Positions 4,501 through 57,273 of a DNA stretch of 64,000 bases are shown here, piece by piece; position 1 is the stretch's first letter, and each line of letters starts with the position of its first letter. Under the pieces are notes generated by a model. That model was not told where the DNA came from. It did not search any database and worked only from the letters and a program-made list of their open reading frames with translations. Position numbers and translations under genes: made by a program. The stretch spans positions 10,664,001 to 10,728,000 of the forward strand of contig NC_087262.1 in NCBI RefSeq assembly GCF_037042905.1, given 5' to 3'. The DNA is from Lytechinus pictus (taxonomy: Eukaryota).

Positions 4501-7500
4501 CTCCTTCTAAGTTATTAGCTCCATAAAAATCTATAACAAGACAGTATATCGAGAATGAGATTGGTACGAGCACTATAATGGCTATACTGCATTTTTCGTT
4601 TATTTTATGAACACTGTTGGAAATTGTTGTTTGAAACAATTGAAATGTTATTTCAGTGAAGATGATTTTGCATGTGAATTCAAGCTTTTTGTTTCAAAAT
4701 ACAAAGACCTAAGTAATTTCAAACATAATTTACGGTCGATTAAGGAATTATAATGTAGAATCCTCTTTTGCCAGTTTTTAATCGCGAAAAAAGGCGAAAA
4801 ATCTCACAAATGCTCTTAAGGTTAATGAAGCCCTGTACTCGTTTTGGGAATATTCAGGATGTCAGATCTCCATGATCTTTGAGTGGTTTCACTTCCGGTT
4901 GAGTAAAAAAAAAATTCACCGAAAATACACTTCCTTAATGGATAGAAAAATGAAGCCAAAAAGAGAGAGAGAAAAAGGGGGCGGGGGGAGAGGCAGATAT
5001 CTTGAGGTATTGGAATCCGCTTACCTAACTCCCTGGCCAGATACCTGCAAATGGCGTTACTCTGCGGAATCACCTTGTCGTCAATCATCAAAACGGGAGC
5101 TTGTCCAGTGGGAAACACTGCATCGGGAAGAAATCAAGCAAATAATGTCGATCACTAAATCTCTAAAAGGTCGACGATAACCAGTTAAGCCTTCTTGTCG
5201 TCATGGATTTGAGAGGGAACAACAAAATCAAAATAATTGGGAGCGGCCGCCCCCCTCCCTGCTGCCACCCCCTCCGCCGCCCCCATGGTGCCGCTCCCGG
5301 GGACCGTTGTCAGATCTGACATCTTTCCTTGATTATGATTGGCTGAGGTAACTGTCGGATAAAATAGGATTTAAAACATCCGACAATTCTTTCATGAAAC
5401 TCTCCCCTGATTACATATTTGGGAATTATCCCTAGTTTCATCCAATAACGGAAATGAGTGACAATATTTAATAACTCGATTTGAAAGATTGAGAGTGATA
5501 GGAAGAGATAGAGATAACAAGGAGAAGAAGATACACATGATGGACGGAAAGGTTAAAGTTTGCACGATACATTATTTTAGATGCATATTCGATACTGGAA
5601 GAAACTTTTGGTGTGGAATCGTGCTACTTAATGGGAACAAGTGCAAAAATTATTTAAGAAAATACACCTTTTGTTGAAGATTGCATCCATAAATACCAGT
5701 TTGCACCCTGAGAGATTTGTACCTTTTAGCATGTCAAGAGTGAATGTATTTTTGCGCCCAAGAGGTGTAATGTTGCAACTTCCCCAGGGGTACACTTCCG
5801 CACCCTAAATGGTGCGAAATGTAGCTAGCTGCACCCTGAAATGTGGAAAAGCGCATTGGGTTAAAGGTACAAAATTGAATCTGTTTTCTAAGTGTCTATA
5901 ATTTACTAATAACAGATTATGTTTAACGAGGGTTGAGGAGAGAGCTTTAATACAAGTTCATATACAAAATCGTAAATATAATAACACAGGGTGACATTAT
6001 CGCCTGTCTCCTTTGCTTATTGACTTTGTGCATGTCACTTTCTAAGAATTTTGTGCATGTCACTTTCTAAGAACACAAATTCAAATCTCAAAATACCAAC
6101 TTTTATGGCAATTGTGATTAGATGTATGTGGTTGATCAGTTTTCCTTTTTCTAGGTTCAACTTTATTTATTTTATTTATTTATTTATTTATTTATTTCTG
6201 ATATTTTGACAGGGTAGCCCATTCACCAATAAGTAGTGGTCTTCCATGGGGCCCTGAATAACAATAAACATATTTACAAAATGCATAACGTATGTACAGA
6301 ATGTTACAGCATTAAGATTCACATTAGGATTTGAATGTAAAACGAAACATTAACAAACTTAGCAACAAACAAAACGCAGACGGGCACTCGTTTGACGTAT
6401 AATAAAATATCAATAAATCAAATTAATTAAGAAGGATATCTTGAAAATACTGATAATATACACCAAATCATCAAGGTCATGCTAACACAAAATAAGCACA
6501 ACAGTGGATGTTCCGCAAGTTATTTATAAATTACAAGTTCTTTTAAACATTATTTTAAATGAAATGACAGAAGGAGCTGTTCTAATTGAATTATCAAGCT
6601 TATTCCATTCAAATATTGAAGATACGATTGGACTACACTTATAACAATCAGTGCGAAACTTGGGCACGCGTAAATATCCACTGTCTCTCTGTCTGGTATG
6701 ATGTTCATGTACATCATTTGGATTGGTTAAGTTTACCTGAAGGTAAGAAGGTGCTAAATTATGAACACATTTAAATATCATCAAAACGCGACTGAGCTCA
6801 AATCGTTTGTCTAGTGTCATCCATTTAAGACTTGTGAACAAATCAGCCGACGGTGTGTCGTATGTCTTGTTCAATATAATTCTTGCAGCCCTCTTCTGAA
6901 TTTTTTGCAGTTTAGTTGTATGGGATTGAAATCTATTCGACCATACAGCAGAACAGTAATCAAATCTTGGCAACACTAAACTGTTATAAAGCAACTTTAA
7001 GGACTTCACAGGCAAAGAACTTTTCGCACTCGTTATTATGCCAATGCTTTTCTGAGTAAGTTTACATACATTTTCAATTTGTTTTGACCATTTCAGTTCT
7101 TCATCTATCAAAACTCCTAAGCATTTGGTGAATTGAACTCTATTTATCAAATCACCGTTTAACGAAATCATGAAAGAATCTATTTTCCTGAGATTAGCAC
7201 GAGAACCTATTATCATGACACAATTTTTTTCAGTGTTGAGGACGAGCTGATTATCTTTAATCCCTGCCATGACCTTGTTTAATGCAACAGTTAATTTTTC
7301 TTCCAAAACTGTCGCATCATTCGCACTGACGGTAAGTGTCGTGTCGTCAGCGTACATATATATATCTATAATACCTTCATGAATACATTCAGGTAAACTA
7401 TTAACATATATTGAAAATAAAAGGGGACCTAGAATTGACCCTAGTGGCACGCCTAATTTGACGATTGAAGGGTGCGATTTGGCTCCTTTGAATTGTGTCA

Positions 7501-9984
7501 CTTGTTGTCGATTAAATAAATATGATTTGAACCAAGTGATAGTCCTCTTACTACAACCAATGCAAGTTAATTTATTTAAAAGCAGCTCATGGTCCGCGGT
7601 ATCAAAGGCCTTCCGAAGATCTATGAACGCAACTCCAGAAATTAAATTGTTATCAATGTTTAACGACCACTGATTTACAAGTTTTGCAAGGGCAGTAGTT
7701 GTTGAATGCATAGGCCGAAAACCAGATTGATTTGGGTGTAATAAATCATTCACGTCCAAGAATTCACTTAGCTGTTGGTGAACAGCCCTTTCTAAAATTT
7801 TACTAACGATTGGTAATATAGAAATTGGGCGGTAATTATTCAACGAAGACATATCACCAGATTTAAATATTGGTACTACCCGAGCCTTTTTCCATTCACG
7901 AGGAACAACTCCAGTAGTAAGGGATTTGTTAATAATATCACAAAGGGACTCTGCGATAATATTTTTTGTCATCTTTAAAAGTTTGCAGCTGACATGATCT
8001 TCCCCAGTTGATTTATCTATACTCAGATTATCAATCTGTTTCAAAACAAAATCTCTAGTAATCAACTCTAGCTCAAATTGAGAGTGAATTGAACCAACAT
8101 TTGTATCATCTTCTACTTGAACTCTCTGTTGAGACGTATCCCTTTGCAGGTCCTTAGTAATATTAGTAGCATTTGAAATGAAAAATTCATTAAATCCTTC
8201 AGCAATATTTGCATTGCCCGACACATCTGTTCCATCTACGTTTATGGTGTTGGGAGAAATAGGTAATGACTTGGGCACAAGTTCTCTCAAACATCTCCAC
8301 ATTTTCTTACTATTGTTTTGATTTTGTGAAATCTGGTTAGCATTATATTCTTTTTTACTTTTTCTCATGAGATGAATAACTTTATTTTTCAGAAATTTGT
8401 ATGTGTCCCAAATATCATTATTTTTGTTAACTTTAGCTGTTTTTAGAACCTTATCACGTTCCTTCATTAGCTTGACGACCCCGTCAGATATCCAAGGACA
8501 AGCTTTTTTTCTTATCCGCTTTTTACAAAAGAGAATGATGATATGATGACATGAAACTCGGTAAAGAAAACAATCTAAAGTAGGCCTACTGAATAAGAAA
8601 TTCAAAAAGTAGCTTCGTCATTGGTTTGCGTATTTATTATTGAGCAAACACTTCAATATCAAATTTATTCACTGTGTTTTTTTTAGCAAACGACAAATAG
8701 ACCCTGGTAATTGAGAGTGAACTTTGGACCGAGTTCAGTTGACAATTTAGAATATTTGAAATGACGAACTCTTCCGAAAGGGATGGCAAAAGAAAACAGC
8801 AAGGCCTATACACACATTATTTTGCACCCTTCAAATTCCAAATTGGAGGCTCTTTAGGGGCGAAATTATTTACAGGTACAGGTTGCTACTTAATTTTACA
8901 CCATAAAGGGTGCAGAATTGTGCCTTTTAACATGGGCCAGGGAAGCGGGGGTGCTGCTGAAACATCGATCCACAAGATTTTTTTTTCTGGGGGTGTACTG
9001 CGCCCCCTGGAAATTAGGTTGGTACGCTATAATGTAGAGATTTTACCCAAATCACATTCACAACATTCACTTGGAAGCAAACCCCATTTTTGTCAGTCAA
9101 ACCTTTTAAACAAACCAGCACACTCTCTTTAAAAAAAATCATTCCCAGGCCCAAGCCCCTTAGAAATGGTTTATTTTATTGCACCCTTTTGAATTTTCAC
9201 ACCCTTTAGCATGTTAGGTGTGAAGATCGAGTACAACATGCAGGGTTGCATACTCTCACCTTTTTTAAACGTATTATACTTGTAGATCATCCATTGGCCT
9301 AGATCCGTGACGTCATATTATTCAAGTTGGAGGGGGGGGGGTGATAGAATAGATCACCCTCCCTCAACAATATAGGTTCACCGCTTGGATTCACGCCAGT
9401 GGCATCATCACCATCATCATCACTACCCCCCCCCCCTCATACCATCATACACCATCACCATACATTATACCGCCGCACCACCNNNNNNNNNNNNNNNNNN
9501 NNNNNNNNNNNNNNNNNNNNNNNNNNNNNNNNNNNNNNNNNNNNNNNNNNNNNNNNNNNNNNNNNNNNNNNNNNNNNNNNNNNNNNNNNNNNNNNNNNNN
9601 NNNNNNNNNNNNNNNNNNNNNNNNNNNNNNNGTCGTCGTCATCGACCATCGAATTGTCATCATCACAATCATCATCACCACCGTGACCACCACCATCGTC
9701 AGCATATCATCATCGTCCTCATTATCACCATCATGGTCGTCGTCGTCGTCGTCATCATCATCATCACACAGCACCATCATCATCTGCTCATCATGATAAT
9801 CACCTTATTGTTTAAAGGGGTTTCAATAATCTAAAAACTCACTTTCTTTATTGGTCTTTCGCTGCGGCCATTCCTCGTGTTTAAAACGGTCATCGACAAA
9901 GTTGATACCCCTAAGAGTAAACATCATACGGGCAGGCTCGGCACGACCACGGGCATCAAAGTAGATCAGTTTATAGTTGGGCAT
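1563..9984 (-). CDS. Sigma-class glutathione S-transferase, paralog 1 (5 exons, 209 aa)
   Basis: Exons 9984-9843, 5117-5025, 4530-4415, 3188-3084, 1736-1563, all GT-AG, phases 1,1,0,0, total 630 nt. Protein MPNYKLIYFDARGRAEPARMMF...EEWPQRK...FPTGQAPVL...PQSNAICRYLARE...YGANNLEGAQID...SLADIHVF...YIASRPVTDS*. Catalytic Tyr, RGRAE, cis-Pro loop, QS motif, N-capping box and terminal RP are all present. Confidence 0.95.
1905..2072. mobile_element. Palindromic MITE (relative at ~34706-34832)
   Basis: Termini gggctccgtaac.../...gtgttacgggccc; the same termini occur at 34706-34832. Confidence 0.55.
2433..2999. mobile_element. MITE with GAGACGTC-rich arms in GST1 intron 4
   Basis: Imperfect TIRs cctatctcgccaaaggagacgtct / agacgtctcccttggtgagacag. 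Confidence 0.55.
6162..8530 (-). mobile_element. 5'-truncated non-LTR retrotransposon (CR1/L2-group LINE) in GST1 intron 1; RT ORF remnant 6524-8605
   Basis: ORF motifs PW, NYRPISILP, QSGFR..HST, DLRKAFD, GVP(L)GSILGPLLF, YADD, LGV..D..LKW; no endonuclease domain. 3' UTR has a stem-loop-like end and an (AAAT)n tail at ~6162-6197. Confidence 0.93.
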
Positions 9985-45115: not shown

Positions 45116-45253
45116 NNNNNNNNNNNNNNNNNNNNNNNNNNNNNNNNNNNNNNNNNNNNNNNNNNNNNNNNNNNNNNNNNNNNNNNNNNNNNNNNNNNNN
45201 NNNNNNNNNNNNNNNNNNNNNNNNNNNNNNNNNNNNNNNNNNNATTATCATTA

Positions 45254-45461
45254 CACTCTTAGAAATGCTGGGCAACATACTGTCCACACAACAATTGGTT
45301 AAAACTTTTTCCAATTCTGGGTAGTTTTAAACCAATAATGTCATGAATGTGTGCTTTGGGTGAAAACTACACAGTATTGGTTGAAGACTATACCCGGAGT
45401 TGGATATATTTTTTTAAACAATTGTTGTGTGGACAGTATGTTGCCCAACATTTTAAGAGTG
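45254..45461. mobile_element. CACTC-terminal palindromic MITE (duplicate ~54846-55044)
   Basis: cactcttagaaatgctgggcaacatactgtccacacaacaattg mirrored at the other end. Confidence 0.75.
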
Positions 45462-46125
45462 TATTATTATAAATATTATTACTATTACTATTATTATTAT
45501 CATCATCATCATTTATTTATTTATTTATTCATTCATTCATTTATTTAATTATTTATTTATCATAATACAGGTATATTTATTCAGGTACAAAAGATCAGCG
45601 AAAGGATTTTTTCATCAATGGCCTGATGAAAACAGAATCACGATTATAACAAATAACATCAATATCATACATGAAAGTAAAATCAAATTATGAATCATTA
45701 TCGAGGCAGTGCTTAGTAACACAAATAACAAATATTTTTTACGTAAGTGCTTACACGACAGTGTATAAAATGTTACAGTTATCACAACGGAAAAATATAG
45801 ATAAAAACTACACTACACTTATAAAAATAACTGAAATGAAAGTAAAGAAATGAAATAGGGGCGCTATAGTAACTAAAAATTTGAGTGAAACAATTCCTAT
45901 AAAGCACGCGTATTATTTTTATTATCATTATTCATTATTATTATCATCATCATCTTCATTATCATCTGGATTATCAGTTGGTTCTTTTTTTTTTTATCTC
46001 AACCAATACGAGTAGTATGTATTTTTCCTTGTAATTTTGCTAACAAATTTATCAAATTTGAACAAAACGACGTTCAAAATGAAAGCTATATCGCTGTGAA
46101 CCTAGAACAGAAACGAATAAACTGT

Positions 46126-47466
46126 TCACATCGAGGAGAAGAGATATTTCTTCTCCCATTCCTCACATTTCCCTTTGGCTATCGCGTCTTTTTCCAATTG
46201 AATATCATGTCTCTTTGCTGCCACAAAGCATTTTATGAACTCAGGACCAAGGGCTTCAGTGATGACTTCGTCTTCTAGCAAAGCTTCAACTGCTTCTTCC
46301 ATAGTTGCAGGTAGCCTCTTGGTTCCTTCTGGAACATACTTGTCCTGGTATGCATCGCCCTCAATGCCTTCTGGAAGCGGAAGTTTCTTGATAATACCAT
46401 CTATTCCTGCTGCAATGGTTGCAGCCATGCTGATATACGGATTGCACGCACTTGCACCTATCCGATTCTCGATATAGGCACTTCTCTCTCCATCGGTTTT
46501 GACTCGGATGGCACAGGTTCGGTTGTCAGGTCCCCATGTTGCGTTCCAAGGGGCAGCAGAATTCACTTGAAACCTCTTGAGGCAGTTTGGCGTGGGTGCC
46601 ATGAAGATTGCGATGGCTCTGGCGTGGGCAACAAGACCGGCAACCCAGTACTGCCCAATGTCGGACAAACTGGTAGGACTGGATGCGTCGTAAAGCTTCG
46701 GGATCTTACCGTCAGCATCCCAAAGCGAGTGGCAGTAGTGCGCGGATGAACCGAATTTATCTATCCATGGTTTAGACATGAACGAAGCGATGTATCCGTG
46801 CTGAAGTGCGATTTCCTTGATTCCCAGTTTGAATGTGTGAGCTGTATCTGCAGCCTTAATCCCAAACTCTGGACGGAAGGTGATCTCCAACTGTCCTTCC
46901 CCGGATTCACATCCAAAACACTCAATATCAACACCAGCCTTTGGAAGATCTGTAATAACTTGCTGGAAAAAGGCATCGTACATCGACGAACAAACTGTTG
47001 ATAAACAGAATGTGTCCGAATCCATGGGCTTCATAGTTTCTTTGTTGACGAGATAAAATTCGAACTCATGGGCTGACCAAAGAGTCAGGTCCAGCTCTTT
47101 CAAACGCTCAAGTTGTCGTTTGGCAACAACCCTTGGGTATCCGGGAACCTTCTGGCCGTTGTATTCCCCCTCGAGCAAGACTCTGGCCGTGTCGGTACAC
47201 CATGGTATAATCTGGAAGGTCTCTAGGTCAGGAAACGCCTTGCAGTCAGCATAATGAATCTCTTCACCATAGCCGGTGTTCTTGATAGGTACACCCCTAG
47301 GATCGAATGCTAAGAAGACAAGGCACATGTTGACCCCATTGGTAGCCATTTTCTCGAAATGTTTGACCGGAATAGATCGACAATGTGGTACTCCATAGTT
47401 ATTCGATTGTTCAAATCGGACAGTCTTGATGCCATTCTCCTTCAAAGATTTCAAAATCTTTTCCAT
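46126..47466 (-). CDS. Class-I glutamine synthetase-like (lengsin-like) protein, copy A, 446 aa; probable gamma-glutamyl-amine ligase
   Basis: Uninterrupted ORF with GS-I motifs: VRFE, PDLETF..IPW, HEFEFY, E..EGQLE, FMSKP...GSSAH.CHSLW, KRF, WG.DNRT..IR, YIENR, NPY. A splice acceptor 27 nt upstream of the ATG (47494-47496) indicates a 5'UTR intron. Confidence 0.92.
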   Translation of the reverse strand: MEKILKSLKENGIKTVRFEQSNNYGVPHCRSIPVKHFEKMATNGVNMCLVFLAFDPRGVPIKNTGYGEEIHYADCKAFPDLETFQIIPWCTDTARVLLEGEYNGQKVPGYPRVVAKRQLERLKELDLTLWSAHEFEFYLVNKETMKPMDSDTFCLSTVCSSMYDAFFQQVITDLPKAGVDIECFGCESGEGQLEITFRPEFGIKAADTAHTFKLGIKEIALQHGYIASFMSKPWIDKFGSSAHYCHSLWDADGKIPKLYDASSPTSLSDIGQYWVAGLVAHARAIAIFMAPTPNCLKRFQVNSAAPWNATWGPDNRTCAIRVKTDGERSAYIENRIGASACNPYISMAATIAAGIDGIIKKLPLPEGIEGDAYQDKYVPEGTKRLPATMEEAVEALLEDEVITEALGPEFIKCFVAAKRHDIQLEKDAIAKGKCEEWEKKYLFSSM

Positions 47467-48412
47467 GCTTGTTCCAGAAGTCTCTAAATTAATCTGTGAA
47501 AAAATTGAGTTTATGAATGATTAAGGCGGTACAAAATATCTATTTCCAATTTGTGCCAAATGATAACCTTTTCGCTTTGGCGGTAGTCAAATGTGAAGAC
47601 ACTCAAATTAAAAATTTATTCTTATTGGCAAACGCTTGTTCGTATATTTTCGATATAGGAAATTGACAATCCTGATGGTATACTAGGGGCACCTCTAAAG
47701 GTGTTACTTTGCACCTCTAAGTACCTTTTAGACGTAGCTTTACAAGGAAAGAAAGAGGCAGAATCAGTGGCGTACCGTGGGTCATGGTATTGGGGCCGGG
47801 GCACTAGCAAAAATTTTGAGTCACTTGTTGAGCGCGCTTCGCGCGCTCAATTGCCAAGTATACTGACTTAATAGAGGCATTTTAAGGACAGTGCCATTAA
47901 ACGGATATGTATCTCACTGATTAAAAAAATGCGAGCGCGAAGCGCGAGCTGAAAATTTTTGGTATTCAGACCTAAAAAGGGAAATTATAAGCAATTTTTT
48001 GTAAAACGTACCTTTCTCGCTAAACAAACAGTGCGAGCGCGAAGCGTGAGCTGAAATTTTTGTATATATTGACCCCAAACAGGGACATTTTAAGGACTGT
48101 ATTTTAGGAATCCATTAAGAGTATACATATTTCACCATAGTCATCTAATGCGAGTGCCAAGCGCTTGCTGATTTTGTTAGAATGACATCTAAACACATGA
48201 AGCACTTGTAGTCTTTGTAATCATGATGAACATACGCATCTCACTCAATCAAATATTGCGAGCGCGAAGCGCGAGCTGAAAATTAAGGAAATTCAGACCT
48301 GTAGAGGGGCATTATAATAAGGCTTGTTTGTATGAATTCACTAAGACCATACGTATTTCACTAACCAAATGATGCGAGCGCGAAGCGCGAGCTGAATTTT
48401 TATATATATATA

Positions 48413-50505
48413 CACAACAAAAAAAGTAAGTCCCCCTTAAACAAACATCAATAATTTCCGAACCAATGCGAGTTTTTAATATATTTTTTCATCGGCGTGT
48501 AGATAATTTCATAAGCTACCCGCTGAGTAAATGTTATGGACGTATTTTACGTCATGCTTCAGTGAGCACCGTCAGAAGGCAAGAGTGTCACTTTTCAAAA
48601 GTCACAAGCCAAATATCATGACTTTGATTCCATTTTATTGGAACTAAATCCACATTTTCATCATGAAAAATAGTCAGAAAGCTTGTAAAAGGTACTTTCT
48701 AAAAGACGATACAACTTTTTGGCTAAATTTCACGGTTTGAATAAACACAAGTCCAAATTTGCTATAATTTGATTTTTTACACATTTCTATCAATAAAAAT
48801 AATAAAATATGATGACATCTATTTTTGGGAAGAGTATCTTAAAAAATATTCATCGTTTCACGGTTCAATGAACATTTATTGAAAACACAAAATACGATTT
48901 TCAAATATCATAGGCAAGCATTGTTTCATTTTGGTAACTGAAAATGATCTTTTCTCAACTTTTTCGTTAGGTTCATGACCAATTAACATGCTTCAATGAT
49001 TCAAAGGCATTTCATTAAACATTCACGCTTGAATGAACATGTGGAATGTGATTAGCTCTTTTTTACGTTATTGGAAAAAATGCAATTTGTAACTATGGAT
49101 ATCTGTCACAAACCTCCTTGCATAGTTCATTTGATTTGATTTTATGAAAATCCCGATGTTCGATGCATCAGTGAGCACACAATATTCGAAAATTATGCAA
49201 ATGAGAAGAAAGTTCAAGGCCTTGGCCCCACTCTGTGTCGTATCGAATGGTTATTTTGGTGGGCGCGCCTTTTGGATGTGTTACTCTGAAGCCATGTGCG
49301 AAGTTTCATGAAATAACTGTTGGCAGAAGTAACAAAAACCGTCCATGAAACAAACCCTCATTTAATATTTGTTAAAATTTTGACTTCCTCTCTCATAGAC
49401 TTGTGTACATTATTGGTGCATATGTTTAAGAATAGGTTGCCCCTTATTCAATATGGTGGAAGTTTTTTTTCAAGGCTGTCTTTAGCAATGTCATTTGGCA
49501 GTAATGTTTATCAACCTATGGGCAGAATTATGTGCAAAAATGAAATCGATTTGTTTATTTATGGATGAGTGAGCATGCATCAAAGTGGGAAAATTGGTAT
49601 TTTCAATGTCACAGACTCATTGTAAAGGGTAAAAAAGTGAATATTGGGGGCAAATTCGGTTTCAAATGAGACTCTAATTGCTGTTGTTTTTATCATCCAT
49701 CATTTCTATCACCACACACTTTCCGAACTTTAAATAGTTTCATGGTTGAGCGAGCACATTCGAAAACTTAGGAATGAATACTCTTTATACTGCATACATG
49801 TATTGTTTTCCTAACAATTTCTCATGATCAGTTTAATTTATGGACAAATCGGTGGTGGATCCAGAATTTTAAAATGGGGGAGGGGCCTATAATCGGGGCA
49901 GCCACCAACATTCAAATTTTAACATGATCTAACAAGTTGTAGATGATACTACCATAAACCCCTATGATGATACGTCACAATACAGGGGCCGCGGAACGGT
50001 TTTCAAAGTGGGGAGGGGGGACTGAGCCAAAAGTGGGGGGGGGGGGTGACCATGCAAAAAATCACAATCGTATGGTCATTTTTACATTTTTGTACATGCT
50101 TTTGGAAAAATGGGGGGGGGGGGGGGCTGGAGCCCCCCCCCCTCTTCCGCGGCCCCTGCAATACATTGTGCTCACTCAACTATGAACATACGATATCAAA
50201 ATTGTGTGTGGAGTGCCTAAATGATGGATAGTAAAACAGCATAACACCATAAAATTCACCTAAAAGCAACTGTTGCCCAACTTTGTATTTGCACAATCTG
50301 AAAAACGACTCTGGTGACTTTAAAAAATTGTCATTTTTAATTCAATCTTTAATTTCTCATGCATGACTCAACCGATCAATTTCATTTTTCCCCAGGAGTT
50401 GCTTAATGAGTGTAAAAAACCACCTACGAAATATCATATCTCAAAATAATTCCGTTCAAAAGTTACAGCAATTTGATTTATGGGGGACTTACTTTTTTCG
50501 TTGTG
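48413..50505. mobile_element. 2.1-kb TA-flanked (Tc1/mariner-like) element nested in the hAT element
   Basis: TIR cacaacaaaaaaagtaagtccccc / gggggacttacttttttcgttgtg; TA TSD. Confidence 0.85.
49983..50158. mobile_element. CAGGGGCC-terminal MITE, 5-bp TSD, third nesting level
   Basis: TIR caggggccgcggaa / ttccgcggcccctg; TSD CAATA. Confidence 0.85.
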
Positions 50506-51990
50506 TATAGATCAGAAAAAAATGACATTTTAAGGACTGATTTTAGGAATTCATGAAGAGCAGACATATCTCACTAATCCACTAATGTGAACGTAAGCAC
50601 GGATAGGCGGAAGTAGTCATGAAAAAGAAACATATGTCACTACATAAAACAATAATAGCATGAAGTGCAACGAGATATATTTGGTTTATATTGACTTGAA
50701 AACGGGAGGTAGCATAATAACATAACATAATAATTTCTTCTTTCCCACTACGTTTCTTTTCCTTTCTCCCTCCTTTTCTCCTCTTTCTCCCCGTTTTTTT
50801 TTGGCCAGCCGATTGGGGGGGGCACGTGCCCCCATGCCCCCCCCCCCCGTAGTTACGTCGCTGGGCAGAATTCAATTGCACCCGTAAAAAAAGGCCCAGT
50901 AATCACGAGGATGACATTGCTAGATGGGCCTAGTCGGACCTTTCACATGTTTTATATCTAAAGAGCCCAACTTTCTTTTGAAAGAGCATCATTCGCAAAT
51001 AACGTTATCTCGATATTGAGGTACATCTACGGAAAAAATGAAAATATCTAGACTTACCTAGACGAAAATGAAGGCCTATAATGATTTAAGAACCGAGTCT
51101 ACATTGCACTCTGGCGAAGTCGAAAATGTCCGTATACCAACTATTAATGCAATCATAATGGTCTAGGCGGTAAAACAGGTTGGGAAGGGGTGGCCCCCTC
51201 GATGAATTTTCTTTTTTTCAACTTGAAAAAAAAAACCTGAGAAAAGAGAAAGAAGTGCACCAAACAGCGAGGACTTGATTGAGCCATATTACCTGTCTGG
51301 TGATTCAAATGAGACAAAAATAGAGTTATGTCCAGGTCGTCCCCCTTCTAAAACAACCCTGGTGCTGCCCCTGATCCTGCCGAAAGATCTACCATATAGA
51401 ACTTTGAACCTGCTTTATTTTGCTCGGTCATGTGATTATAGAATGGCGCAATTTTCTCTTTCACAATTGAGAGGTGTAGTGTGCTCTGTTTAAGTTTCCT
51501 AATTTCAATATTTGATTGAGCTGCACGAAAGGAACTGGTGGGCACGCATCCTGCCCCATCCCTTCCTTTCGCTGTCTCTGTCTGTTTGTTTGCCCCCCCC
51601 CCTGTCGCCTTGTTACATTTGAGTTTAACCATGGATCCTTCTAGAACGAAGAGGATCCATGATAAATGGATTCTGATAACATGAAAGGCGAATCCTGCAC
51701 TGTAAAAAGTGTGGTGTTAAAACTAACACCAGTTGGTGTTAATAGAGGACCACACCCCAAGGTGTTAAAATTGCACCCTAGATATTGAACATAACACCAA
51801 AGAGTGTACAAGTAACATCCAGAGGTGTTGTAATAACACCTATAGGTGTTAAACTAACACTGTCAATTTAACACCGGAGTAAAATAACCGGTGTGAGTAC
51901 ACCGGTTAACACCACAGTTTTTGCTGTGTGGGTACTCACAGTCATAAAGCCGGTAAAAGTGGCAGGGGTAGAATTGGAAGAGGCAAATAT

Positions 51991-52765
51991 GGCAGAGGTA
52001 AAAATGACAGATATAAAACTGGTAGAGGTAAAAATGACAGATATAAAACTGGTAGAGGTAAAAATGACAGATATAAAACTGGTAGAGGTAAAAATGACAG
52101 ATATAAAACTGGTAGAGGTAAAAATGACAGATATAAAACTGGTAGAGGTAAAAATGACAGATATAAAACTAATAGAGGTTAAAATGACAGATATAAAACT
52201 GGTAGAGGTAAAAATGACAGATATAAAACTGGTAGAGGTAAAAATGACAGATATAAAACTGGTAGAGGTAAAAATGACAGATATAAGACTGGTAGGGGTG
52301 AAAATGACAGATATAAAACTGGTAGAGGTAAAAATGACAGATATAAAACTGGTAGAGGTAAAAATGACAGATATAAAACTGGTAGAGGTCAAAATGACAG
52401 ATATAAAACTGGTAGAGGTAAAAATGACAGATATAAAACTGGTAGAGGTAAAAATGACAGATATTAAACTGGTAGAGGTAAAAATGACAGATATAAAACT
52501 GGTAGAGGTAAAAATGACAGATATAAAACTGGTAGAGGTAAAAATGACAGATATAAAACTGGTAGAGGTAAAAATGACAGATATACAACTGGTAGAGGTA
52601 AAAATGACAGATATAAAACTTGAAGAGGTAAACATGACAAATATAAAACTGGTAGAGGTAAAAATGACAGATATAAAATTGGTAGAGGTGAAAATGACAG
52701 ATATAAAACTGGTAGAGGTAAAAATGACAGATATAAAACTGGTAGAGGTAAAAATGGAAGAGGTG
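51991..52765. repeat. 30-bp minisatellite (ggtagaggtaaaaatgacagatataaaact) x ~25
   Basis: Highly homogeneous tandem array; the unit is a dimer of two related 15-mers. Confidence 0.97.
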
Positions 52766-54175: not shown

Positions 54176-55705
54176 GCTCAACTTACCCCACCTTCCCCTA
54201 CTCAATGCAAGTGGGTTAAATTGGTACTTGGCAGGAATTAATTCCCTTAAATTATTGTGCTCTGTAAAAGGCAACGATTGGCTGAAGACGGGGAAATATA
54301 GACTATAGAAGTGCATACATGTATATATAGACGTTGTTTAATAATCTGACATCCGCTACACAACGATCATGTATCATTATTTTTATTTGTATTATTNNNN
54401 NNNNNNNNNNNNNNNNNNNNNNNNNNNNNNNNNNNNNNNNNNNNNNNNNNNNNNNNNNNNNNNNNNNNNNNNNNNNNNNNNNNNNNNNNNNNNNNNNNNN
54501 NNNNNNNNNNNNNNNNNNNNNNNNNNNNNNNNNNNNNNNNNNNNNNNNNNNNNNNNNNNNNNNNNNNNNNNNNNNNNNNNNNNNNNNNNNNNNNNNNNNN
54601 NNNNNNNNNNNNNNNNNNNNNNNNNNNNNNNNNNNNNNNNNNNNNNNNNNNNNNNNNNNNNNNNNNNNNNNNNNNNNNNNNNNNNNNNNNNNNNNNNNNN
54701 NNNNNNNNNNNNNNNNNNNNNNNNNNNNNNNNNNNNNNNNNNNNNNNNNNNNNNNNNNNNNNNNNNNNNNNNNNNNNNNNNNNNNNNNNNNNNNNNNNNN
54801 NNNNNNNNNNNNNNNNNNNNNNNNNNNNNNNNNNNATTATTTTTACACTCTCAGAAATGTTGGGCAACATACTGTCCACACAACAATTGGTTAAAACTTT
54901 TTCCAATTCTGTGTAGTTTTAAACCAATAATGTCATGAATGTGTGCTTTGGGTGAAAACTACACAGTATATTGGTTGAAGACTATACCCGGAGTTTTTTA
55001 ACAATTGTTGTGTGGACAGTATGTTGCCCAACATTTTAAGAGTGTATTATTATCAATATTGTTACTATTACTATTATCATTATTATTATCATCATCATTT
55101 ATTTATTTATTTATTCATTTATTTAATTATTTATTTATCATAGTACAGGTATATTTATTCAGGTACAAAAGATCAGCGAAAGGATTTTTTCATCAATGGC
55201 CTGATGAAAACAGAATCACGATTACAACAAATAACATCAATATCATACATGAAAGTAAAATCAAATTATGACTCATTATCTAGGCAGTGCTTAGTAACAC
55301 AAATAACAAATATTTTTTACGTAAGTGTTTACATGACAGTGTATAAAATGTTACAGTTATCACAACGGAAAAATATAGATATAAACTACACTACACTTAT
55401 GAAAATCACTGAAATGAAAGTAATGAAATACAATAGGGGCGCTATAGTAACTAAAAATTTGATTGAAACAATTCCTATAAAGCACGCGTATTATTTTTAT
55501 TATCATTATTCATTATTATTATCATCATCATCTTCATTATCATCTGGATTATCAGTTGGTTCTTGTTTTTTTTTTAAATCTCAACCAATACGAGTAGTAT
55601 GTATTTTTCTTTGTAATTTTGCTAACAAATTTATCAAATTTGAACAAAACGACGTTCATAATGAGAGTTATATCGCTGTGAACCTAGAACAGAAACGAAT
55701 ACAGT

Positions 55706-57052
55706 TCACATCGAGGAGAAAAGATATTTCTTCTCCCATTCCTCACATTTCCCTTTGGCTATCGCGTCTTTTTCCAATTGAATATCATGTCTCTTTGCTG
55801 CCACAAAGCATTTTATGAACTCGGGACCAAGGGCTTCAGTGATGACTTCGTCTTCTAGCAAAGCTTCAACTGCTTCTTCCATAGTTGCAGGTAGCCTCTT
55901 GGTTCCTTCTGGAACATACTTGTCCTGGTATGCATCGCCCTCACCGTCAATGCCTTCTGGAAGCGGAAGTTTCTTGATGATACCATCTATTCCTGCTGCA
56001 ATGGTTGCAGCCATGCTGATATACGGATTGCACGCACTTGCACCTATCCGATTCTCGATATAGGCACTTCTCTCTCCATCTGTTTTGACCCGGATGGCAC
56101 AGGTTCGGTTGTCAGGTCCCCATGTTGCGTTCCAAGGGGCAGCAGAATTCACTTGAAACCTCTTGAGGCAGTTTGGCGTGGGTGCCATGAAGATTGCGAT
56201 GGCTCTGGCGTGGGCAACAAGACCGGCAACCCAGTACTGCCCAATGTCGGACAAACTGGTAGGACTGGATGCGTCGTAAAGCTTCGGGATCTTACCGTCA
56301 GCATCCCAAAGCGAGTGGCAGTAGTGCGCGGATGAACCGAATTTATCTAGCCATGGTTTAGACATGAACGAAGCGATGTATCCGTGCTTAAGTGCGATTT
56401 CCTTGATTCCCAGTTTGAATGTGTGAGCTGTATCTGCAGCCTTAATCCCAAACTCTGGATGGAAGGTGATCTCCAACTGTCCTTCCCCGGCTTCACATCC
56501 AAAACACTCAATATCAACACCAGCCTTTGGAAGATCTGTAATAACTTGCTGGAAAAAGGCATCGTACATCGACAAACAAACTGTTGATAAACAGAATGTG
56601 TCCGAATCCATGGGCTTCATAGTTTCTTTGTTGACGAGATAAAATTCGAACTCATGGGCTGACCAAAGAGACAGGTCCAGCTCTTTCAAACGCTCAAGTT
56701 GTCGTTTGGCAACAACCCTTGGGTATCCGGGCACCTTCTGGCCGTTGTATTCCCCCTCGAGCAAGACTCTAGCCGTGTCGGTACACCATGGTAGAATCTG
56801 GAAGGTCTCGAGGTCAGGAAACGCCTTGCAGTCAGCATAGTGGATCTCTTCACCATAGCCGGTGTTCTTTATAGGTACACCCCTAGGATCGAATGCTAAG
56901 AAGGCAAGGCACATGTTGACTCCATTGGTAGCCATTTTCTCGAAATGTTTGACCGGAATAGATCGACAATGGGGTACTCCATAGATATTCGATTGTTCAA
57001 ATCGAACAGTCTTGATGCCATTCTCCTTCAAAGATTTCAAAATCTTTTCCAT
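55706..57052 (-). CDS. Class-I glutamine synthetase-like (lengsin-like) protein, copy B, 448 aa
   Basis: Near-identical to copy A: 9 aa substitutions plus a 2-aa insertion by my count. Same acceptor 27 nt upstream of the ATG (57080-57082). Confidence 0.92.
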   Translation of the reverse strand: MEKILKSLKENGIKTVRFEQSNIYGVPHCRSIPVKHFEKMATNGVNMCLAFLAFDPRGVPIKNTGYGEEIHYADCKAFPDLETFQILPWCTDTARVLLEGEYNGQKVPGYPRVVAKRQLERLKELDLSLWSAHEFEFYLVNKETMKPMDSDTFCLSTVCLSMYDAFFQQVITDLPKAGVDIECFGCEAGEGQLEITFHPEFGIKAADTAHTFKLGIKEIALKHGYIASFMSKPWLDKFGSSAHYCHSLWDADGKIPKLYDASSPTSLSDIGQYWVAGLVAHARAIAIFMAPTPNCLKRFQVNSAAPWNATWGPDNRTCAIRVKTDGERSAYIENRIGASACNPYISMAATIAAGIDGIIKKLPLPEGIDGEGDAYQDKYVPEGTKRLPATMEEAVEALLEDEVITEALGPEFIKCFVAAKRHDIQLEKDAIAKGKCEEWEKKYLFSSM

Positions 57053-57273
57053 GATTGTTCCAGAAGTCTCTAAATTAATCTGGGAAAAAAATATTTAAGT
57101 TTAGGAATGATTAAGGCGGTACAAAATATATATTTCCAATGTGTGCTAAATGCTAACTTTTTCGCTTTGGCGGTAGTTAAACGTGAAGAAACTCAAATTA
57201 AAAATTTATTCTTATTGGCAAACGCTTGTTCGTATATTTTCCATATAGGAAATTGACAATCCTGATGGTATAC

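What the first reader, a model, noticed from the sequence alone, without database searches (positions are those of the whole stretch)
46126..47466. Lengsin-like proteins look like active gamma-glutamyl-amine ligases, not glutamine synthetases
Seen, by manual motif alignment to enterobacterial GlnA: metal ligands E134, E136, E187, E194, H243, E333 and arginines R298, R316, R321, R335 are retained. The ammonium-site elements are replaced: the E327 flap (GYEAP) is NSAAP, the D50 loop (FDGSS) is MCLVF, the Y179 region is FCLS, and N264 is F238. Known: this loss pattern characterises GS-like enzymes acting on organic amines; vertebrate lengsin is catalytically inactive; invertebrates are reported to inactivate biogenic amines by ATP-dependent gamma-glutamylation (gamma-glutamylhistamine synthase activity). 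Inference: these genes are candidates for that kind of activity.
Basis: partly seen in the sequence, partly recalled or inferred. Interest (0 to 1): 0.78.

Follow-up and report, generated by a model that had tools for sequence, protein, structure and literature searches.

The report
Sea-urchin lengsin-like amine-ligase candidates
Two tandem sea-urchin genes of the lengsin (class I glutamine-synthetase) family keep every catalytic residue but lack the ammonium site, so they are probably working enzymes that join glutamate to an unidentified organic amine rather than making glutamine.

Summary
The ORF at 46126-47466(-), 446 aa, has a 98%-identical tandem copy at 55706-57052(-). Both are GS class I proteins in a sea urchin, most likely Lytechinus pictus.

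Retained:
- All six metal ligands and the four arginines.

Lost or changed:
- The flap Glu is Ala304.
- The strict Asp50' column is Cys48, followed by a 12-residue loop insertion shared with E. coli PuuA.
- Asn264 is Phe238.
- I checked these columns against a GmaS homologue that reproduces the published GmaS residues.

Caveat: an Asp (D55), kept in 88% of relatives and present in PuuA, lies in the inserted loop. Pairwise HMM alignments to true GS place it on Asp50.

Supporting evidence:
- Vertebrate lengsins have lost most catalytic residues; these genes have not.
- dN/dS between the two copies is 0.17.
- Transcript-like contigs cover the gene, and one continues past a splice acceptor.
- The best characterised structural matches are organic-amine ligases (NpaA1, AtdA1, IpuC, GmaS).
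- The genome also has a canonical GSII gene.
- About 20 intact paralogues keep the catalytic core and vary at the amine-site positions.

The "active amine ligase, not GS" reading is therefore the best-supported one, but no activity was measured and the substrate is unknown. The biogenic-amine link is untested. Two other first-reader notes in this scan make the same suggestion for paralogues elsewhere in this genome.

The parts
46126..47466 (-). Coding sequence of lengsin-like GS class I protein, copy 1 (446 aa, one coding exon)
   Evidence: ORF. Pfam Gln-synt_C 2.4e-85. AlphaFold model mean pLDDT 93.5.
55706..57052 (-). Coding sequence of tandem copy 2 (448 aa; 98% identical; two extra codons, Asp-Gly, in the loop after residue 368)
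   Evidence: dN/dS against copy 1 is 0.17, from 14 synonymous and 9 non-synonymous codon differences.
47248..47334 (-). Residues 45-73: beta-3 ending in C48 (strict Asp50' column), then a loop 12 residues longer than in GlnA that contains the conserved D55. It aligns with the PuuA loop.
   Evidence: Comparable long N-terminal loop (V68'-M81') in NpaA1: PMC11335346.
47059..47067 (-). E134-F-E136, metal ligands (GlnA E129, E131)
46885..46908 (-). E187...E194, metal ligands (GlnA E212, E220). G185 sits in the column of the GmaS amine base Asp177.
46726..46755 (-). F238-G239...H243-Y-C245-H-S247: N264 replaced by Phe, H269 kept, H271 replaced by Cys, S273 kept
46549..46575 (-). R298 (GlnA R321) and the flap N302-S-A304-A-P306. 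The flap Glu327 is replaced by Ala.
46462..46521 (-). R316, R321, E333, R335 (GlnA R339, R344, E357, R359)
47494..47510 (-). Pyrimidine tract plus CAG, a likely 3' splice site 27-29 nt upstream of the ATG. The 5' UTR is probably spliced.
   Evidence: Sequence. Contigs of runs X1 and X15 both stop matching at 47495. The X15 contig carries 87 further letters that do not lie on the adjacent DNA (table 8).
45854..46125 (-). Probable 3' UTR
   Evidence: The X15 contig covers 45854-47253 and the X1 contig covers 46008-47495.
45244..47683 (.). Duplicated block, 96% identical to 54836-57273: a tandem segmental duplication carrying the two genes
   Evidence: blastn of the two halves of the window.

Best explanation
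The two genes encode working ATP-dependent ligases of the GS class I fold. They would activate glutamate to gamma-glutamyl phosphate as GS does, then pass the gamma-glutamyl group to an organic amine (or another nitrogen nucleophile bulkier than ammonium) instead of ammonia.

Shown here:
- The metal, ATP-phosphate and glutamate-binding residues are kept.
- The flap Glu and the strict Asp50' position are lost.
- A long loop from the N-terminal domain is inserted at the place where, in GS-type oligomers, the neighbouring subunit closes the ammonium pocket.
- The genes are under purifying selection.
- Transcript-like contigs cover the gene.

Inferred:
- That the enzyme is active.
- That the second substrate is an amine.
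- That D55' or E194 acts as the base.

The family has about 20 intact paralogues in this genome, with an invariant core and variable pocket positions. That pattern suggests a set of enzymes with different amine substrates. Which amine this pair uses is unknown.
For: - All ten catalytic residues are kept in both copies and in the S. purpuratus orthologue.
- Five vertebrate lengsins in the same alignment have lost the equivalents of E129, E212, H269, R339 and R344, and four of the five also R359.
- The column of the flap Glu is never Glu in 109 relatives: mostly Phe, Ala here.
- The Asp50' column is Cys/Pro/Tyr/Leu/Ser.
- The alignment columns are checked against a GmaS homologue that reproduces the published Ala48', Trp300 and Asp177 positions (PMC7948447).
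- The same two losses and an extra N-terminal loop are described for organic-amine ligases (PMC11335346).
- Foldseek PDB top hit is NpaA1, the 1-naphthylamine ligase (TM 0.92), followed by GmaS.
- In Swiss-Prot models, after the lengsins come IpuC (TM 0.90, rmsd 1.9), AtdA1 (TM 0.92) and GmaS.
- dN/dS is 0.17 for the tandem pair and 0.13-0.16 for three other close paralogue pairs.
- Contigs of 1.4-1.5 kb from two studies cover the gene and stop at a splice acceptor.
- A canonical GSII gene exists elsewhere in the genome.
- Among 12 intact paralogues the catalytic positions have zero entropy. The loop 45-66, residues 141-170, 236-238 and 299-307 are the most variable.
- A eukaryotic precedent exists: the plant GSI-like protein CsTSI makes theanine (PMC9909507 abstract).
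Against: - No enzymatic data exist for any animal lengsin-like protein that I could find.
- The proteins are not in the bacterial PuuA clade in the tree.
- They score below the curated cut-offs of the PuuA-type and GmaS-type models.
- The GmaS amine-site residues Q175/D177/N188 are C183/G185/T196 here, so the amine site cannot be copied from a solved enzyme.
- D55 could act as an Asp50' substitute.
- True archaeal GS score nearly as well as the amine ligases by sequence and by fold.
- Two raw RNA runs of the species, about 6% of each read, had no read on the gene.
Confidence: 0.6

Rival explanations
1. They are real glutamine synthetases that use ammonium, with D55 of the inserted loop standing in for Asp50' and another residue replacing the flap Glu.
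For: Pairwise HMM alignments put F-D55-P-R-G on FDGSS of true GS. D55 is conserved in 96 of 109 relatives. Archaeal GS are close by sequence and fold.
Against: - The flap Glu is absent from the whole family.
- By secondary structure and by the GmaS calibration, D55 lies seven residues past the strict Asp50' column (C48), inside the inserted loop.
- PuuA, an amine ligase, has the same Asp.
- The TIGR00653 score of 229 is far below its cut-off of 429, and its best stretch covers only the C-terminal half.
- The genome has a canonical GSII gene.
- About 20 paralogues with differing pocket residues are hard to explain for a single small substrate.
Confidence: 0.07
2. They are non-catalytic proteins with a structural, binding or regulatory role, like vertebrate lens lengsin.
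For: - They belong to the same animal clade as vertebrate lengsin (best Swiss-Prot fold matches).
- Loss of catalysis has happened repeatedly in the family. Paralogues L017 and L020 and their S. purpuratus orthologues lack several metal ligands.
Against: - All ten catalytic residues are kept in both copies and in the orthologue 85% identical to them.
- These positions are invariant across 12 intact paralogues that are otherwise only 38-68% identical to this pair.
- dN/dS is 0.17.
Confidence: 0.12
3. They are active ligases of this fold but with different chemistry: another carboxylate than glutamate, or a nucleophile that is not a simple amine (an amino acid, peptide, hydrazine or hydroxylamine).
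For: - N264 is Phe and H271 is Cys.
- The window pair has an unusual F153/A304 combination where most relatives have N or Q with F.
- Some paralogues have lost the glutamate-binding Arg (R298 is M or S in L023, L025, L026, L028). This shows the acid site can change within the family.
Against: - In this pair R298, E136, G239, H243 and R335 are all kept.
- PuuA, which uses glutamate, also lacks N264: it has Ala there.
- H271 is Asn or Cys in many relatives and, from my own knowledge, Asn in Bacillus-type GS.
Confidence: 0.15

Closest known systems
Vertebrate lengsin (LGSN), the lens protein
   Same: Same animal branch of GS class I in the tree, SH-aLRT 92. Best Swiss-Prot fold matches, E about 1e-41, 32-34% identity. 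NCBI names the urchin genes 'lengsin-like'.
   Different: Vertebrate lengsins carry a long N-terminal extension and have lost most of the metal and arginine residues. They are reported to be inactive (PMC2667176 citing Wyatt 2006 and Grassi 2006). The urchin proteins have no extension and keep all of these residues.
Bacterial glutamate-organic amine ligases ('GoaS': NpaA1, AtdA1, IpuC, PuuA)
   Same: - Fold, TM 0.90-0.92.
- Kept ATP, metal and glutamate residues.
- Flap Glu replaced by a hydrophobic residue.
- Asp50' lost.
- Extra N-terminal loop at the same place; it aligns residue by residue with the PuuA loop, including an Asp (PMC11335346).
   Different: Only 26-31% identity. PuuA lies in a separate clade. 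The NF045547 score of 224 is against a cut-off of 650. The genes sit in an animal genome with no catabolic operon.
Gamma-glutamylmethylamide synthetase (GmaS)
   Same: Fold. Same two losses: Ala48' and Trp300 in GmaS (PMC7948447).
   Different: The GmaS amine-site residues Q175, D177 and N188 are C183, G185 and T196 here. The TIGR03105 score of 234 is against a cut-off of 470.
Plant GSI-like theanine synthetase CsTSI
   Same: A eukaryotic GS class I-like protein shown to ligate glutamate to an organic amine, ethylamine (PMC9909507 abstract).
   Different: Not compared by sequence here. It is a plant lineage; from my own knowledge, other plant and fungal GSI-like proteins (NodGS, FluG) carry an extra N-terminal domain.
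Gamma-glutamylamine synthetase activity of gastropod nervous tissue (gamma-glutamyl-histamine, -dopamine, -serotonin)
   Same: An ATP-dependent glutamate-amine ligation would be the same reaction type. Gastropods carry lengsin-like genes: the Biomphalaria and Pomacea proteins keep all ten catalytic residues, while several Haliotis paralogues have lost R298 or other positions.
   Different: It is an activity known only biochemically (cited in PMC6454038 and PMC4472778). I found no gene assigned to it and no report of it in echinoderms.

Membership tests
GS superfamily, class I fold (Pfam Gln-synt_C) | Significant match to the catalytic-domain profile, and a GS-like fold | tested here: met
   PF00120 E=2.4e-85 over residues 110-430. 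Model pLDDT 93.5. TM 0.85-0.92 to solved GS-type structures.
True glutamine synthetase (EC 6.3.1.2, GlnA type I) | Flap glutamate (E327 in S. typhimurium numbering) | tested here: not met
   A304 lies in that column. No Glu there in 109 relatives.
True glutamine synthetase (EC 6.3.1.2, GlnA type I) | Asp50' at the end of beta-3 of the N-terminal domain | tested here: inconclusive
   The strict column is C48. A conserved D55 seven residues later is placed on Asp50 by pairwise HMM alignments. Coordinates of an oligomer model are needed to decide.
True glutamine synthetase (EC 6.3.1.2, GlnA type I) | Score above the curated cut-off of the GlnA equivalog model | tested here: not met
   TIGR00653 scores 228.7 bits against a cut-off of 429.
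Animal lengsin family | Groups with vertebrate lengsin to the exclusion of bacterial GS-like proteins | tested here: met
   A 37-row deuterostome clade includes three vertebrate lengsins, SH-aLRT 92. The sister clade holds annelid and copepod 'lengsin'. The tree was a quick search with no bootstrap.
Animal lengsin family | Loss of catalytic residues and an N-terminal extension, the features of the lens protein itself | tested here: not met
   All catalytic residues are kept and there is no extension.
Glutamate-organic amine ligases (GoaS/PuuA type) | Kept ATP, metal and glutamate residues together with loss of the flap Glu and Asp50' | tested here: met
   Criterion taken from PMC11335346.
Glutamate-organic amine ligases (GoaS/PuuA type) | Additional N-terminal loop ('motif 15') lining the neighbour's pocket | tested here: inconclusive
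   The loop from C48 to D74 is 12 residues longer than in GlnA and aligns with the PuuA loop. The motif itself was not available to score, and its position in the oligomer was not modelled.
Glutamate-organic amine ligases (GoaS/PuuA type) | Membership of the bacterial clade, or a score above the PuuA equivalog cut-off | tested here: not met
   NF045547 scores 224 against 650. PuuA lies in a distant clade.
Glutamate-organic amine ligases (GoaS/PuuA type) | Measured amine-dependent, ammonium-independent ligase activity | not testable with these tools
   Needs a recombinant enzyme assay.
GmaS (TIGR03105) | Amine-site residues Gln175, Asp177 and Asn188, and the curated cut-off | tested here: not met
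   C183, G185 and T196 lie in those columns. The score is 234.3 against 469.6.

The most novel reading that the evidence does not exclude
The animal lengsin family (echinoderms, hemichordates, annelids, gastropods, probably copepods) is a family of working gamma-glutamyl-amine ligases. It includes the enzyme behind the gamma-glutamyl conjugation of histamine, dopamine and serotonin described in invertebrate nervous tissue since the 1980s, for which I found no assigned gene. Its expansion to about 20 genes in sea urchins is a conjugation system for endogenous or dietary amines. Vertebrate lens lengsin would be its last, inactivated remnant.
Probability: 0.25. Interest if true: 0.8.

Novelty: new member of a known kind. 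Interest (0 to 1): 0.55.

Why it matters
GS-like enzymes that ligate glutamate to organic amines are established in bacteria and, with theanine synthetase, in one plant. I found none described in animals.

Gamma-glutamyl conjugation of biogenic amines is a documented inactivation route in gastropods, and in the papers I could search no gene is assigned to it. This work shows three things:
- The animal lengsin family outside vertebrates keeps a complete catalytic core.
- It carries the amine-ligase signature.
- It is present in gastropods as well as in urchins.

That turns an old biochemical observation into a testable gene candidate. The size of the urchin family, and the way variation concentrates at the putative amine site, also suggest an unrecognised conjugation system.

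L. pictus is, from my own knowledge, a sea urchin in which knock-out lines can be raised, so the hypothesis can also be tested in vivo.

The genes themselves are already annotated as 'lengsin-like'. Their presence in sea urchins has been known since 2006 (Wyatt et al., from memory; the paper could not be opened). What is new is the functional reading.

Tried and rejected
- **Gene neighbourhoods of the nearest bacterial relatives**. One relative is followed by an AMP-binding enzyme. The other lies near an amino-acid permease. There is no consistent partner, so no substrate clue.
- **Raw RNA reads.** Two 2026 runs of the species gave no read on the gene in about 6% samples. This is uninformative about silence, because contig runs from two other studies hold it.
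- **Wyatt et al. 2006 (PMC1868402).** It could not be opened by PMC id or DOI, so what that paper says about the urchin genes is from memory only.
- **Canonical GS in the representative search.** None of the 150 best representatives that are single-domain proteins carries FDGSS plus GYEAP/GFEAP. I therefore could not build a canonical GS profile for a profile-profile test of the Asp50 column. The GmaS calibration replaced it.
- **NCBIfam scores.** They do not discriminate: 234, 229 and 224 bits for the GmaS, GlnA and PuuA models, all far below their cut-offs.
- **Horizontal transfer from bacteria.** I considered this as the source of the single-exon coding sequences and rejected it as the simplest reading. 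The genes sit inside an animal clade with vertebrate lengsin, the 5' UTR appears spliced, and some paralogues need an upstream exon.
- **No complex prediction was run.** It would have returned scores rather than the coordinates needed to place D55.

Full report
**What is there**

- The window is animal DNA. It has about 37% G+C, a reverse-transcriptase ORF, microsatellites and assembly gaps.
- The ORF at 46126-47466 on the minus strand encodes 446 residues from ATG to stop.
- A second ORF at 55706-57052(-) encodes 448 residues, with 437 of 448 identical.
- The two lie in a duplicated block, 45244-47683 against 54836-57273, that is 96% identical.
- The nearest named protein is 'lengsin-like' of Strongylocentrotus purpuratus, at 85% identity.
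- Paralogues fetched from the window's own genome are 100% and 99.8% identical to proteins named 'lengsin-like [Lytechinus pictus]'. The genome is therefore very probably L. pictus.

**Family and fold**

- Pfam gives Gln-synt_C at E=2.4e-85.
- NCBIfam gives similar scores for the GmaS-type (234 bits), GlnA (229) and PuuA-type (224) models. All are far below their cut-offs.
- An AlphaFold model built on 45 relatives has mean pLDDT 93.5.
- Against solved structures the best match is NpaA1, the 1-naphthylamine-glutamate ligase (TM 0.92). GmaS follows, then archaeal GS.
- Against Swiss-Prot models the order is: mammalian lengsins, IpuC (glutamate-isopropylamine ligase, TM 0.90, rmsd 1.9), a Dictyostelium type-1 GS, AtdA1 (gamma-glutamylanilide synthase, TM 0.92), GmaS, then archaeal GS.

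**Check of the residues**

I fetched E. coli GlnA and PuuA and aligned them with both window proteins and 109 relatives.

Retained:
- Metal ligands E134, E136, E187, E194, H243, E333.
- Arginines R298, R316, R321, R335.

Replaced:
- The flap Glu327 column holds A304.
- N264 is F238.
- H271 is C245.
- Y179 falls on C154 by MAFFT or T152 by pairwise HMM.

The Asp50' column holds C48. The evidence for that column is:
- MAFFT places it there.
- The model's strand 45-48 ends at C48.
- HMMER alignment of PuuA to B. subtilis GS puts Asp50 on PuuA Pro71, which is the same column.

As an independent check I added a GmaS homologue. It shows Ala, Trp and Q-x-D-x-E...E-x-N in exactly the columns that the GmaS crystal-structure paper assigns to Asp50' (Ala48'), the flap Glu (Trp300) and the amine site (Gln175, Asp177, Glu179, Glu186, Asn188) (PMC7948447). 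The columns are therefore trustworthy.

One caveat remains. After C48 the protein has a loop 12 residues longer than GlnA. In it D55 is conserved in 96 of 109 relatives and aligns with an Asp of PuuA. Pairwise HMM alignments to true GS place F-D55-P-R-G on FDGSS. Whether D55' reaches the neighbour's active site cannot be decided without coordinates of an oligomer.

**Comparison with inactive lengsin**

- Five vertebrate lengsins in the same alignment have T/S, S/A, V/L/N, N and N/S in the columns of E129, E212, H269, R339 and R344; four of the five also have K for R359. This fits their reported lack of activity.
- The window pair, its S. purpuratus orthologue and most paralogues keep everything.
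- Two L. pictus paralogues (L017, L020) and their S. purpuratus orthologues have lost several ligands.
- Four others (L023, L025, L026, L028) have lost the R321 equivalent.

**Is the gene alive?**

- dN/dS between the tandem copies is 0.17. Three other close paralogue pairs give 0.13-0.16.
- Contig runs from two studies of the same species hold a 1.4-1.5 kb piece that covers the ORF. They have no coverage of the unique DNA just upstream.
- Both stop matching at 47495, next to a pyrimidine tract plus CAG.
- One contig continues for 87 letters that are not the adjacent DNA. That is what a spliced 5' UTR would give.
- The X1 contig mixes variants of copy 1 and copy 2.
- Two raw RNA runs, about 6% of each read, had no read on the gene. 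Expression is therefore not general.

**Is a GS needed from this family?**

No. Exons of a canonical GSII gene lie on another contig. One exon matches human and other GSII structures at E=1e-41.

**The family**

- The genome holds at least 25 loci. About 20 have a full open frame, mostly as one coding exon.
- In a quick maximum-likelihood tree the urchin, other echinoderm and hemichordate proteins form one clade with vertebrate lengsins (SH-aLRT 92).
- The sister clade contains annelid and copepod proteins.
- Vitrella, Balamuthia and cyanobacterial proteins lie outside.
- PuuA and GlnA are distant.
- Among 12 intact L. pictus paralogues the catalytic positions never vary. The loop 45-66, residues 141-170, 236-238 and the flap 299-307 are the most variable parts.
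- The window pair and its S. purpuratus orthologue have a rare F153/A304 combination where most relatives have N or Q with F.

**The biogenic-amine idea**

- Gamma-glutamyl conjugation of monoamines is described as taking over the role of monoamine oxidase in Aplysia and other gastropods. A gamma-glutamylhistamine synthetase activity is cited for Aplysia.
- A search with an annelid family member found lengsin-like proteins in Haliotis, Pomacea and Biomphalaria. The Biomphalaria and Pomacea proteins keep all ten catalytic residues, several Haliotis paralogues have lost R298 or other positions, and none has Glu at the flap position.
- No held paper mentions lengsin together with sea urchins, and none of the 13 that mention it with gamma-glutamyl addresses amine conjugation.
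- This keeps the idea alive for the family. It says nothing specific about this urchin pair, and I found no report of gamma-glutamyl amines in echinoderms.

**Verdict**

- The reading 'active glutamate-amine ligase, not GS' is the best explanation, at about 0.6.
- The reading rests on a residue signature that two structure papers treat as diagnostic, and on fold similarity, selection and family pattern.
- It is not proof of activity. The proteins are not members of the bacterial PuuA/GoaS or GmaS clades.
- The genes are already annotated; the functional hypothesis is what is new.
- Two other first-reader notes of this scan make the same suggestion for paralogues elsewhere in this genome. They are not independent evidence.

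Noticed in passing
G000 loci L003-L032: The genome has at least 25 lengsin-like loci. Many are in local clusters (C5 near 35.1-35.2 Mb, C5 48.7 Mb, C8 33.4 Mb, C3 64.55 Mb, C19 8.9 Mb). Most have the coding sequence in one exon. Several are truncated or carry stops (L015/L027, L019, L022, L024).
   Followed up: partly
L017 (G000:C20:9112569-9113900) and L020 (G000:C12:14301738-14303063): Two paralogues have lost several metal ligands (E134 to K or V, E187 to G or L, E194 to G or R, H243 to Y in L020). Their S. purpuratus orthologues (P0066, P0091) share the same changes. These look like conserved pseudoenzymes that arose independently of vertebrate lengsin.
   Followed up: partly
L023, L025, L026, L028: A divergent subgroup keeps the metal ligands but has Met or Ser in place of the glutamate-binding Arg (R298 column) and Ser in place of Q192. 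It may use a different acid substrate. dN/dS for L023/L025 is 0.37.
   Followed up: partly
window 46555-46557 and 47008-47010 (codons A304 and F153): The window pair and its S. purpuratus orthologue have F153 with A304, where most relatives have N or Q with F. This looks like a swap of bulk across the pocket, specific to this sub-lineage.
   Followed up: partly
G000:C15, about 4633800-4635600, minus strand (L058): Exons of a canonical eukaryotic GSII glutamine synthetase. One exon matches mammalian GS structures at E=1e-41.
   Followed up: yes
window 51990-52756: A 30-bp minisatellite, 25.6 copies, 95% matches. It gives long open frames on both strands that are almost certainly not genes.
   Followed up: partly
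window 6524-8605, minus strand: A 693-aa ORF with a reverse-transcriptase domain (RVT_1, E=7e-35), probably a non-LTR retrotransposon.
   Followed up: partly
window 47870-48650: Repeats with very high depth (hundreds to thousands) in the contig runs, and with reads in the raw RNA runs. These are transcribed dispersed repeats just upstream of copy 1.
   Followed up: no
run X1 contig on window 46008-47495: The contig carries the 6-base insertion and 15 of the 29 base differences of copy 2, the copy-1 base at the other 14 sites, and 4 changes of its own. It could be an allele, gene conversion between the copies, or a chimeric assembly.
   Followed up: partly
proteins P0121 (4424 aa) and P0182 (2757 aa): Giant proteins with up to six GS-like stretches. 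Unlike every single-domain relative in the list, they carry FDGSS and GFEAP motifs. Their origin is unknown.
   Followed up: no
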